Assembly (NCBI RefSeq): GCF_964204645.1
Contig: NC_134030.1
Location: 3,576,778 to 3,640,777, forward strand
Reading direction: 5' to 3'
DNA length: 64,000 bases
Source: Tubulanus polymorphus
Taxonomy: Eukaryota > Animalia > Nemertea
The notes beneath the pieces are model-generated. The model saw nothing but the letters and a program-made list of their open reading frames with translations, searched no databases and was not told the origin of the DNA. Every line of letters starts with the position of its first letter. Positions within the stretch are counted from its first letter, which is position 1. The position numbers and the translations under genes are program-made. Shown here in pieces: positions 37,590 to 60,800 of the stretch.

Positions 37590-38126
37590 ATTCAACATGG
37601 CCGCCGAACGCTACGTCATCGATCACGTGACCACGCGGAATGATTGACATTTCCATGGAAACATAGTTTACCGCCCCACGCGCCCCAATCTCCCTCTCAC
37701 GCCCCCCGCGCCACCGCGATCACACACAGAGGAAACGACTTTCCGCCATTTTGAGGTCGTGGATTCCCCTCTCCACCGCATATACAACTTCACTAATACT
37801 TTCGGAGGAAATTAACGATTTTAACGCATCGTCGGTCAGTGACACGACAACTGAACATAGCCGAAATATCACCGGATTAACGGATTATCCCGCATCAGTC
37901 TGTTTACATTCACAGATCGGTCGCAAAGCGTCGACAAACTAAAACCGTCGAGATTTTCAAACTGAATCGTGTTCTCGCGCCATTTTGGTTTCTACTCTAC
38001 ACCATCACAACAACATTGATTAACGCGGATTAGGATTACCTTCCTTCCTCGTAAAATTATGCTGAACGGATTTACGCAGTATTAACGCCACCATTCGCTT
38101 CATCGCACGAGAACGAGAAATTGACG
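37590..38126 (+). promoter_or_regulatory. CpG-rich distal promoter and first exon of DYRK1A
   Basis: Three YY1-like motifs (CAACATGGCCGCC 37593, CCGCCATTTTG 37743, GCGCCATTTTG 37977), E-box TCACGTGAC 37623, X-box-like ATTTCCATGGAAAC 37649, GC-rich boxes, and donor ACG|GTAAGA at 38127. Confidence 0.65.
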
Positions 38127-57814: not shown

Positions 57815-60800
57815 GGCAGGGTCATAAGAGCCGACACCATGCGCCGCAGGCACTATACGGGCGTATAGTCGATCCAGATGATCTGGTCAGCATGGCGACT
57901 GAAACGAACCAGGACGTGGGCTCGATGCAGACCCGGATGACGTTCCGTGAGCCCGGCGCGGCACCGTTGCGCAAACTCAGCGTCGATCTCATCAAAACCT
58001 ACAAACACATCAATGAGGTAATAATCGGTCTCGATGCTTGTATGATTACAGGATTCTACGACTCCTCGATTTCTTAAAAACTCCTGAACAGACAATCTTT
58101 TAAAGCTGCCTGAAACTCTTTTAATTTGAATGAAATACCTTGAAAACTCATCCAATTTGGAAAATAAACAATTAGAAGTTTTTGTCTAGTTTGTATGTAC
58201 AATAGACTACCCCTCAGTCGGTACAGCTGGGACCAGGATTTTTTTAAACCAAAAGGTAGCTACAGAATTAGAAACCAAGATTTATAATGAATAGGATAAA
58301 AATTTGCTTGTAAAACTGGTTCACCGAGATATACAGTACCGATTTAAGAGTCTACAGTAATTTGGATATGAAAATGTTAAGAATGTTTGTCTTTCGCTGA
58401 AAAATTCGCTGAAAACTCCTTATATCAAGGAATGACTGATCTGTATGGACACTGATAGAGCGACCTCTGTACCAGACCTGACTATGACTACGAGGATCTT
58501 TATGTATTTTTGCTATTACTGCTCTATCCGATCGTCGACCTCGAAACAAGTTGACAGTTAAGCCGTCGATATTGAAATCGATGGTACTGTTGTTCAACTG
58601 ACGACGCCTTGAGGACGCTTGAGGTGAAAACAAAAAAACCCAGTTTTTTATATCGATGAGATTTTGTTTTTACTACATTTACAATGACGTAAATGACACG
58701 TTTTTTTGTACAAACAACCGGAGGGTTTCGGTGACCTTTTTCAATTGACGCAGTTGTCTGTCAATTATTTGAAATAAAAGTAAACCCCAGTCATGGATCG
58801 ATAAATTAAGGCATTATTATGTATTGAATGCAGCCTCTAGAAATATTCCTGAATGATTATGACAAGAAGTACAGAGTGGCCATTGACCTGGAAAACCTGG
58901 AAAACTAAGGGAATCAGAAAATTCAGGGATTTTTACAAGTTTTACCTAAAAAGTGGAAAACTTCGAATAATGGTATTGACCACGCATTTCTTTATTGGTT
59001 GCTGATTCCATGAGAAATAAATGAATTATAACATTTTTAACCTAGAAATTTCACTCAGGGAATTATGTGTCATGGAAAAATCAATAAAAACTCTGGGAAT
59101 TTGTAAATGAGCAGTAAGTGGTGCCATCCTGTTATAAACATTTCAGACATGCTTTTCTCATTGTGAGATTTTATATTATTGCAACGTGGACAGTGTTTTA
59201 TCAAAGGTCATATAGCCTCTAGAAGTTAAGTGAAAGTGAAGGGGACCAAACTGTTTTATTAATTCAACCATTTTTGTATTAGTCTATGACGAACATTGAA
59301 CTAGCTGATATCCTGGGGTTCTGATACTACTGCTGCTGCTGCCATCTATAATGTTTATATTGTACTAAGATGGACTTCATTTGCTAGCTAGTGGTCAATC
59401 TTTACCGGTAAGAAGACATAAACCGGTATAGTACGCTGATAACTATTAGTGATATATTGACACGCTCGAAGTGTGCGCAGATAATGTCTTTATGTTTACT
59501 GAGGTGCGGATCATGGTAACAAATTCCGTTATAGCAGTTATGACCGAGCCACCCGGAAGGGCATTAGGCCACCTGTTTGTTTGAATACAATGAACTGAAG
59601 CCTTGGTAACTACAATGGCGAGACCTAAAGTGGTGCATGCCAGCACATGGAATGAATTAGTCGATTACTGAACTCTGAATAATTTTGATAATGAATCTGT
59701 GCAATATGTAAGCCTGTTACCACCAGGACTGGAATGAAAATATGGCTGCATTTTTAGGTGGTAACACTGTTTGACTGGCTAAAATAAGTATTCAGGCATA
59801 AAGTCATACATCAAGTGGCATTTGAAAAAAGATTCCCCTAACATTTGAATTATCCTTGAATTATCCTTCTCTCTCCTTTTATTATTTTTCTGTTAGTGCA
59901 CATCTTTGTGTCACTCATTTTTGTTTTTTGTCTGTTTGTTGTTATTGTTGTTTTTCTCCATTCACAATCTTATACTTTGGATTTATGATGAATGAATTGA
60001 AATTGAAATTGAATTGAGCTCAGCAATTTGGTTCAGTTTCACTGAGACATTATTTCGTAACAGTCTATACCTTCCTTAATATATTTCAAAAATTCTGTGT
60101 TGGTGAAATGAAAATTTAAAAATAGAAAATATGAAAAACCTTAATACGTCAAAATCTAATACATTAATTTTAAAAAGAAAAATAACCTAAATTTTTATAT
60201 TCATTCAGACAATCTAGATCTTTTTATGTCATAATAAAAAATCCATAGGCTCCAATAAAGAAAAATGATATATCATTTGTGATAACGATTTTTGAAGCAG
60301 AAAATTCTATTTAAGTACATCGTATCGACCCAGATAAACACGTGTTGGTTTTTTCCTAGGTTTCCATTGATATCATCATATTTTTTAAATGAAATATGAA
60401 TAGTTTGCTCACGCGAAACATGTGCAACACAAGCGTTTATACGGAGAGAGAGAGAGCATTGAGTGCTGTCTCGGGCTTCTTGTGTTCGTCGTATCGGGTT
60501 CGCTTCAACTTATGTCATAAGCGCTTGCATTGTGTCTAGAAAAAAGAACACGCAGATGACTGGAGGACGATTTGTTCGACTTTTTTGCCGTTACATAACT
60601 CGAAAATAACAACGCGGACCGAGATTCGCGAGTGGGTGATGAGATGCGGGTCTAGGTGAAGAGAACAATGTCCTGAACGTGAACTATGGCGACTAGGTTT
60701 AACATCCTTGTCTATTGTAGTTTCCTGGCAACACGCAGGGGTCATATAAGAGGTAGTAATGAGTCATTCATTGTGAAGTCCGGGTTCACTGAAGACCGGC

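What the first reader, a model, noticed from the sequence alone, without database searches (positions are those of the whole stretch)
37590..58017. Array of phase-matched alternative first exons giving DYRK1A interchangeable N-termini
Seen: the first conserved DYRK1A exon (57815) is open from its acceptor in phase 1 and encodes conserved-looking sequence ([16 protein letters not shown]) before its first Met at 57892, so it expects an upstream coding partner. The preceding 20 kb has at least five CpG-enriched islands ending in a donor whose upstream frame is phase 1: 38093-38126 (non-AUG), 43250-43394, 47452-47599, 52934-52970 and 53597-53663. Exon 43250 has a second phase-1 donor at 43311, and there is a strong apparently non-coding donor at 49025. 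The encoded peptides are unrelated to one another. Known: DYRK1A/minibrain genes use alternative promoters and are dosage sensitive. Inference: a 'variable first exon, constant body' system that sets tissue expression and N-terminal targeting. Caveat: I searched for phase-1 donors, so the short candidates could be chance.
Basis: partly seen in the sequence, partly recalled or inferred. Interest (0 to 1): 0.8.

Follow-up and report, generated by a model that had tools for sequence, protein, structure and literature searches.

The report
One confirmed DYRK1A first exon
This is the ordinary 5' end of an invertebrate DYRK1A/minibrain kinase gene: one first coding exon is shown by RNA to splice onto the conserved exon, and the other proposed alternative first exons look like chance matches.

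Summary
Exon 57815-58017 is a real DYRK1A/minibrain exon. It is open from its acceptor in phase 1, and the part before Met 57892 carries a motif conserved across invertebrate DYRK1A proteins, so an upstream coding exon is needed.

One of the five candidates is confirmed. A spliced contig of public run X4 joins 43394 to 57815 and 58017 to 63128. Both exons are single-copy in the genome, so the contig comes from RNA and not from a retrocopy. This exon (ATG 43250, 48 codons plus 1 base) has the only strong donor in the 20 kb and frame-specific codon usage. It matches the brachiopod Lingula gene in layout: 47 codons plus 1 base, phase 1, a 15.3 kb intron, and the same intron position.

The other candidates (38093, 47452, 52934, 53597, and the donors at 43310 and 49024) have no RNA or conservation support. 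Composition-matched random sequence gives about 8 such phase-1 ATG-ORF-donor combinations per 20 kb, against 15 observed (P about 0.04). Candidates 52934 and 53597 do not look coding, and 47452 is ambiguous.

The genome is not CpG-depleted, so "CpG islands" mark little here. Only contigs from one RNA-like sample could be viewed, so rare alternative first exons are not excluded.

Verdict: an ordinary gene structure; the array of alternative first exons is unsupported.

The parts
42045..43249 (+). Inferred 5' leader of the expressed first exon. It is not directly seen and assumes the upstream part of the contig is colinear with the genome.
   Evidence: X4 contig record 23 (1580 nt) carries about 1350 nt upstream of the constant exon. 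If colinear it starts near 42045, about 40 nt downstream of a CCAAT/ATTGG pair at 41959 and 42003. The leader would hold 20 upstream ATGs. The stretch is single-copy in the genome.
43250..43394 (+). Coding part of the first exon: ATG plus 48 codons plus 1 base (phase 1), donor ACG|GTAAGT. Its splicing to 57815 is confirmed.
   Evidence: The loose end before 57814 in the X4 spliced contig matches 43364-43393 exactly and nowhere else in the window. An in-frame stop lies at 43220-43222. It is the only donor scoring 6 or more on the + strand of the 20 kb. Codon log-likelihood ratio is +13.7 in frame against -23.6 and -34.7 off frame, above all 22 null ORFs. Single-copy.
43395..57814 (+). Intron 1 (14,420 nt, GT-AG, phase 1).
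   Evidence: It is skipped in the X4 contig. The Lingula ortholog has a 15.3 kb phase-1 intron at the same position.
57815..58017 (+). Constant exon: the conserved YGRIV..DDL motif, internal Met 57892, and the DCAF7-binding motif region (…[18 protein letters not shown]).
   Evidence: The exon is single-copy. DCAF7 motif mapping in human DYRK1A residues 93-104 is from PMC4910162.
58018..63127 (+). Intron 2 (5,110 nt).
   Evidence: The loose end behind 58019 in the X4 contig matches 63130-63154 exactly, giving the junction 58017^63128.
63128..63316 (+). Next coding exon: the basic NLS stretch, the DH-box-like segment, and the start of the kinase domain (…GKGSFGQ).
   Evidence: It is 94% identical to Lingula P0002.
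63909..64000 (+). Start of the following kinase-domain exon (VVKAYD…). The gene continues for about 4.5 kb beyond the window and ends …CVQQSPVASH.
38093..38126 (+). Unsupported.
   Evidence: There is no ATG in the open frame 38066-38125. The donor ACG|GTAAGA scores 4.6. Codon score is not frame-specific, 5.0 against 6.3. It lies about 4 kb upstream of the inferred start of the expressed exon and could not be covered by the single reads call.
47452..47599 (+). Ambiguous, with no expression evidence.
   Evidence: The donor ACG|GTAATG is weak (1.7). Codon log-likelihood ratio is +8.3, the best of six frames, but 10% of null ORFs score as high. Single-copy. It lies outside the stretch laid with reads.
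52934..52970 (+). Probably chance.
   Evidence: Donor score is 1.5. Codon log-likelihood ratio is -2.8, like the null. No joint from 52970 appears among the listed joints.
53597..53663 (+). Probably chance.
   Evidence: The donor is GGG|GTGGGT (3.9). Codon score is 1.3 in the claimed frame against 9.0 in another frame. No joint from 53663 is listed.
50783..51083 (.). Dispersed repeat of about 300 nt (SINE/MITE-like) inside intron 1.
   Evidence: At least 39 scored copies on all large contigs, 72-89% identical.
53001..53242 (.). Second dispersed repeat (core 53154-53230) inside intron 1. It explains the X4 loose ends at 53154 and 53188.

Best explanation
The region is the standard 5' end of a single-copy class-1 DYRK (DYRK1A/minibrain) gene of an invertebrate, probably a lophotrochozoan. 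Transcription starts in the CpG-richest block, inferred near 42045. The first exon ends at 43394 and carries a long leader plus a 48-codon lineage-specific N-terminal peptide starting at ATG 43250. It is spliced in phase 1 across a 14.4 kb intron to exon 57815-58017. That exon carries the conserved YGR-IV-DDL motif and the DCAF7-binding motif, and is spliced in turn to 63128. The other listed 'first exons' are most likely chance combinations of ATG, open frame and GT inside the long first intron and the upstream spacer.

Shown: both junctions, single-copy status, the conserved intron position and phase in Lingula, and the coding character of 43250-43394.

Inferred: the transcription start, use of ATG 43250 for translation, and non-use of the other candidates.
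For: The X4 spliced contig (1580 nt, depth 15.6) has loose ends matching 43364-43393 and 63130-63154 exactly. Both exons occur once in the 268 Mb assembly, so no retrocopy explains the contig. The donor at 43394 is the only one scoring 6 or more on the + strand. Codon usage is frame-specific for 43250-43393 and for 57817-57891, but not for 38066, 52934 or 53597. In Lingula anatina XP_013383246, exon 1 is 47 codons plus 1 nt, followed by a 15.3 kb intron, and the constant exon starts with 2 nt plus CAG exactly as here. The chance expectation is about 8 phase-1 candidates per 20 kb.
Against: Only Logan contigs of one RNA-like sample (runs X2 and X4 of one study) were available, and 57 loose ends and 100 pieces were not displayed. 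Contigs keep the major path only, so minor or tissue-specific first exons would be invisible. Phase-1 candidates show a weak excess, 15 against about 8 (P about 0.04). Candidate 47452-47599 has mildly coding-like, best-of-six-frames codon usage. A colinear leader would hold 20 upstream ATGs, which is unusual for an efficient start. The leader may therefore be spliced differently, or translation may partly start at Met 57892.
Confidence: 0.72

Rival explanations
1. Several alternative promoters each drive their own coding first exon (38093, 43250, 47452, 52934, 53597). All splice in phase 1 to 57815 and give DYRK1A interchangeable N-termini.
For: One member is real. All candidates are phase-compatible by construction. 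There is a weak excess of phase-1 ATG-ORF-donor combinations. Candidate 47452 is mildly coding-like. Alternative first exons are known in human DYRK1A (PMC2292204, PMC5543054), and Drosophila mnb has five isoforms (PMC9345315).
Against: No second donor was seen joined to 57815. The candidates were selected for phase, and random sequence yields about 8 per 20 kb. Candidates 52934 and 53597 are non-coding-like in the claimed frame, and 38093 lacks an ATG and frame specificity. There is no conservation and no paralogy among the peptides. CpG enrichment is not a promoter mark in a genome with CpG observed/expected about 1.
Confidence: 0.07
2. This is a partial version of the reader's model. Besides 43250-43394, one further first exon is used in some tissue or stage. 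It could be coding (most likely 47452-47599) or non-coding (for example one ending at 38126 or 49024, with translation then starting at Met 57892).
For: Long first introns of dosage-sensitive regulators often hold alternative promoters. Human DYRK1A uses alternative non-coding first exons (PMC2292204). Met 57892 lies just after the conserved motif and could serve transcripts without an upstream ATG. Codon score for 47452 is +8.3.
Against: There is no expression evidence. The donor at 47599 is weak (1.7), and 10% of null ORFs reach its codon score. Skipping the upstream ATG would drop the conserved YGR-IV-DDL motif from the protein.
Confidence: 0.2

Closest known systems
Lingula anatina DYRK1A-like gene LOC106153725 (XP_013383246.1; locus L004)
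   Same: The first coding exon is almost the same size (47 against 48 codons plus 1 nt). The intron is phase 1 and of similar length (15.3 against 14.4 kb) at the same position, with the constant exon starting 2 nt plus CAG. The YxRIV..DD motif and DCAF7 motif lie in the next exon, and the following exon is 94% identical.
   Different: The two exon-1 peptides share no detectable similarity. The Lingula model is a partial or odd one that jumps from the GKGSFGQ exon to the last exon.
Human DYRK1A alternative 5' exons (exons 1A/1B; different exon 1 in the RefSeq isoforms)
   Same: The gene family is the same, and alternative promoters and first exons feed a common downstream exon (PMC2292204, PMC5543054).
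   Different: The characterised human alternative first exons 1A and 1B are non-coding and lie within one CpG island 772 bp apart. Here only one first exon is demonstrated, and it is coding.
Drosophila minibrain (mnb) isoforms E-I
   Same: It is an invertebrate ortholog with several annotated isoforms around a conserved kinase core (PMC9345315). The dipteran representative P0147 carries the same RQRHAPLYGRFV motif upstream of the DCAF7 motif.
   Different: Multiple isoforms are documented in the fly, but not shown here. The N-terminal sequences are unrelated.
Variable-first-exon/constant-body clusters (protocadherin, UGT1A type; from general knowledge)
   Different: In those clusters the variable exons are paralogous, long, each has a conserved promoter element, and each is individually expressed. 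None of this is seen here.

Membership tests
Class-1 DYRK (DYRK1A/minibrain) gene | DCAF7-binding motif N-terminal to the NLS (human residues 93-104; PMC4910162) | tested here: met
   Exon 57815-58017 ends …[19 protein letters not shown], near-identical in all representatives.
Class-1 DYRK (DYRK1A/minibrain) gene | Basic NLS, DH-box-like acidic segment and DYRK kinase domain downstream, with the conserved C-terminal end | tested here: met
   Exons at 63128-63316, 63909 onward, and L002 1201-4464 are 81-94% identical to the dipteran representative P0147 in the kinase core. The C-terminus ends …CVQQSPVASH as in Lingula.
Alternative-first-exon (multi-promoter) gene | Two or more distinct first exons observed spliced to the same acceptor | tested here: inconclusive
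   Only 43394^57815 was seen. The data are contigs of one sample, with many rows not displayed.
Alternative-first-exon (multi-promoter) gene | Each first exon has its own transcription start or promoter | not testable with these tools
   No CAGE, 5'RACE or raw reads were available. The only lead is a CCAAT pair upstream of the inferred 42045 start.
Variable-exon array with coding N-termini (protocadherin/UGT1A-like) | Variable exons are paralogous or individually conserved coding sequences | tested here: not met
   The peptides are unrelated and have no relatives. Only 43250 has clear coding statistics.
Variable-exon array with coding N-termini (protocadherin/UGT1A-like) | Phase compatibility of all variable exons with the constant acceptor, beyond chance | tested here: inconclusive
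   15 observed against 8.3 +/- 3.2 expected, P about 0.04 for the pre-chosen phase and 0.11 for any phase.

The most novel reading that the evidence does not exclude
At least three of the listed exons are real, separately promoted coding first exons. They would give one invertebrate DYRK1A interchangeable, unrelated N-terminal peptides ahead of the conserved YGR-IV-DDL and DCAF7-binding segment. That would be a small variable-first-exon array in a dosage-sensitive kinase.
Probability: 0.05. Interest if true: 0.5.

Novelty: already known. Interest (0 to 1): 0.15.

Why it matters
It matters little beyond correct annotation. The work fixes the true first coding exon, both flanking junctions and the likely start region of this DYRK1A ortholog. 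It also shows that the phase-1 intron before the YGR-IV-DDL exon is shared with a brachiopod. If real alternative coding first exons were later found, they would bear on how N-terminal variation tunes DYRK1A localisation or partner binding, but nothing here points that way.

Tried and rejected
1. RNA runs. X1 behaves as the assembly's DNA at about 28x with heterozygous bubbles. X2 is colinear with the genome. X5 had nothing on the stretch. Only X4 gave a spliced contig.

2. Other loose ends. The X2 loose end at 55272 maps to another chromosome-scale contig (C11), and there is no GT at that site, so it is an assembly chimera or repeat. The X4 loose ends at 53154 and 53188 sit on a dispersed repeat.

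3. Relatives. The full-library search with the constant exon gave 314 hits. Most are short ORFs read from unspliced DNA, and the best identity was 53-69%. The word search for 50-157 aa fragments found no close relative, at most about 62% over the full exon. tblastn of all 150 representatives against the window found nothing outside known exons at E < 0.004. A motif search for the MEKLP…GSVI N-terminus seen in some representatives was negative.

4. A fragment-per-row alignment (A1), meant to seed a word search for full-length relatives, misaligned and was dropped.

5. Rfam and tRNA scans of 30000-64000 found nothing.

6. Exon models were searched exon by exon, by reference only. The joined exon-1 plus constant-exon model was never built or searched.

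Full report
**What is in the sequence**

The acceptor ttcag|GG lies at 57814/57815. The frame of the DYRK1A peptide …[25 protein letters not shown] is open back to 57817, leaving two bases (phase 1). The first in-frame Met is at 57892 and the donor at 58017/58018. Downstream exons follow at 63128-63316 (VYYAKKKRR… to GKGSFGQ) and from 63909 (VVKAYD…). The gene runs about 4.5 kb past the window and ends …CVQQSPVASH.

All five candidate first exons and both extra donors exist as described. The two extra donors are off by one: those exons would end at 43310 and 49024.

**Is the part before the Met coding?**

Yes. The full-library search with the 67-residue exon returned 314 hits. Spliced and unspliced representatives from insects, Limulus, a spider and the brachiopod Lingula carry the same motif upstream of the DCAF7-binding segment: R(Q)RH.PLYGR(L/I/F)V..(E/D)(E/D/Q)L, or a shorter MYGRLV..DQL form. 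Codon usage of 57817-57891 is frame-specific, +8.7 against -0.9 and -7.9, and above all 113 null ORFs. The 3' half of the exon matches the DCAF7-binding motif mapped in human DYRK1A at residues 93-104 (PMC4910162).

**RNA evidence**

The single run search found five runs, none labelled RNA. I laid X1, X2, X4 and X5 on 52150-58100, under the 6,000-letter limit.

- X1 behaves as genomic DNA of the assembled individual.
- X4 record 23 is a 1580 nt contig of depth 15.6 that lies on 57814-58019 only.
- Its upstream loose end is identical to 43364-43393 and occurs nowhere else in the window.
- Its downstream loose end is identical to 63130-63154.
- The one- and two-base overlaps are the shared G and GT at the junctions. 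The contig therefore shows 43394^57815 and 58017^63128, both across GT-AG introns.

The constant exon and the 43200-43394 stretch are each single-copy in the 268 Mb assembly. A retrocopy is thus excluded and the contig is RNA-derived.

The contig has about 1350 nt upstream of the constant exon. If that part is colinear with the genome, it starts near 42045, about 40 nt downstream of an ATTGG/CCAAT pair at 41959 and 42003, inside the CpG-richest block of the interval. This start site is an inference only. The leader would hold 20 upstream ATGs.

**The confirmed exon**

ATG 43250 follows an in-frame stop at 43220-43222. The exon carries 48 codons plus 1 base, and its donor is ACG|GTAAGT. That is the only + strand donor scoring 6 or more in 37590-57814. 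Codon log-likelihood ratio is +13.7 in frame against -23.6 and -34.7 off frame. This lies within the range of real coding pieces (17 +/- 7.7) and above all 22 null ORFs.

**Comparison with Lingula**

The closest spliced relative is Lingula anatina XP_013383246. Its first coding exon is 47 codons plus 1 nt and is followed by a 15.3 kb intron. Its constant exon begins with two bases and CAG, the same position and phase as here. The two exon-1 peptides share no similarity. The architecture is conserved while the N-terminal peptide evolves freely.

I did not verify the taxon.

**The other candidates**

- No joint from 52970 or 53663 appears among the joints listed for the laid stretch.
- 38126, 47599 and 49024 lie outside the laid stretch and would show only as loose ends at 57814. 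The one listed there is 43394.
- The test is weak, because contigs keep the dominant path and many rows were not displayed.

It finds 15 ATG-ORF (10 aa or more) plus phase-1 donor combinations on the + strand, against 9 in phase 0 and 6 in phase 2, and 7, 3 and 5 on the minus strand. Second-order Markov simulations give 8.3 +/- 3.2 per phase, with P(15 or more) = 0.04 for phase 1 and 0.11 for any phase. Picking four ATG candidates out of an expected eight is therefore not evidence.

Codon statistics:

| Candidate | Codon score in claimed frame | Comparison |
|---|---|---|
| 52934 | -2.8 | null-like |
| 53597 | 1.3 | 9.0 in another frame |
| 38066-38125 | 5.0 | 6.3 in another frame; no ATG |
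| 47452-47598 | +8.3 | best of six frames, but 10% of null ORFs match it |

The donor of 47452-47599 is weak (1.7). The real donor at 58017 also scores only 2.6 on the same scale, so a low score does not rule a donor out.

The 'CpG island' criterion adds little. The window's CpG observed/expected ratio is 1.03, and qualifying blocks cover about 40% of the interval. Parts of the intron are dispersed repeats: 50783-51083, 53001-53242 and 55523-55583. No candidate exon lies in them, and the intervals 42000-43450 (holding 43250-43394) and 47300-47800 (holding 47452-47599) are unique in the genome. No Rfam family or tRNA is present.

**Relatives**

No protein closer than about 62-69% identity over the constant exon exists in either protein collection. 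No representative N-terminus matches anything else in the window. Conservation of the candidate peptides therefore cannot be tested with these tools.

Exon models were searched exon by exon, by reference. The joined exon-1 plus constant-exon model was deliberately not built or searched.

**What is known**

- Human DYRK1A has alternative non-coding first exons 1A and 1B with separate promoter regions (PMC2292204).
- The human RefSeq isoforms have different first exons (PMC5543054).
- Drosophila mnb produces five isoforms, E-I (PMC9345315).

Alternative 5' ends in this gene family are thus established. A single coding first exon spliced in phase 1 to the conserved exon is simply the canonical structure.

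**Verdict**

The 'array of interchangeable N-termini' is unsupported and largely explained by chance, but it is not excluded for rare or tissue-specific transcripts. My estimates:

- about 0.9 that 43250-43394 is the principal first coding exon;
- about 0.25 that any one of the other listed candidates is used at all;
- about 0.05 for the full array.

Noticed in passing
window 50783-51083: A dispersed repeat of about 300 nt (SINE/MITE-like) with at least 39 scored copies on all large contigs, 72-89% identical. Many copies show a 55 nt head and a 215 nt body separated by a variable gap.
   Followed up: partly
window 53001-53242 and 55523-55583: Two further short dispersed repeats inside intron 1. 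The first has 37 other copies in the genome. The second shows a depth spike (248 against about 28) and many loose ends in the DNA run.
   Followed up: partly
window 41959-42007: An inverted pair of CCAAT-type boxes embedded in a near-palindrome (…GATTGGTCGAC … GTCGACGGCCAATC…), about 40 nt upstream of the inferred 5' end of the expressed first exon. It is a candidate NF-Y-type core promoter.
   Followed up: no
window 43284-43322: Inside the confirmed exon the coding sequence repeats a TAAGTC unit (peptide DKSYDKSFRKS).
   Followed up: no
L004 (Lingula anatina LFEI02000952.1) 10001-42986: The NCBI model XP_013383246 joins the GKGSFGQ exon directly to the last exon. It would encode a 313 aa DYRK1A N- and C-terminus without a kinase domain, which is either a mis-model across a gap or a kinase-less isoform.
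   Followed up: no
window 11900-30000, + strand: The upstream neighbour is a multi-exon gene with WD-repeat-like and coiled-coil exons (a 472 aa acidic/serine-rich exon at 11919-13337, and others to about 29400). Downstream of DYRK1A lies a DDX6/me31B-like helicase (L003).
   Followed up: no
window 44590-44630, 50058-50100, 54770-54859: Short direct repeats (41-43 nt, 77-85% identical) link three places in intron 1, with a 40 nt inverted match between 49971 and 54817. These are possibly remnants of one degraded element.
   Followed up: no
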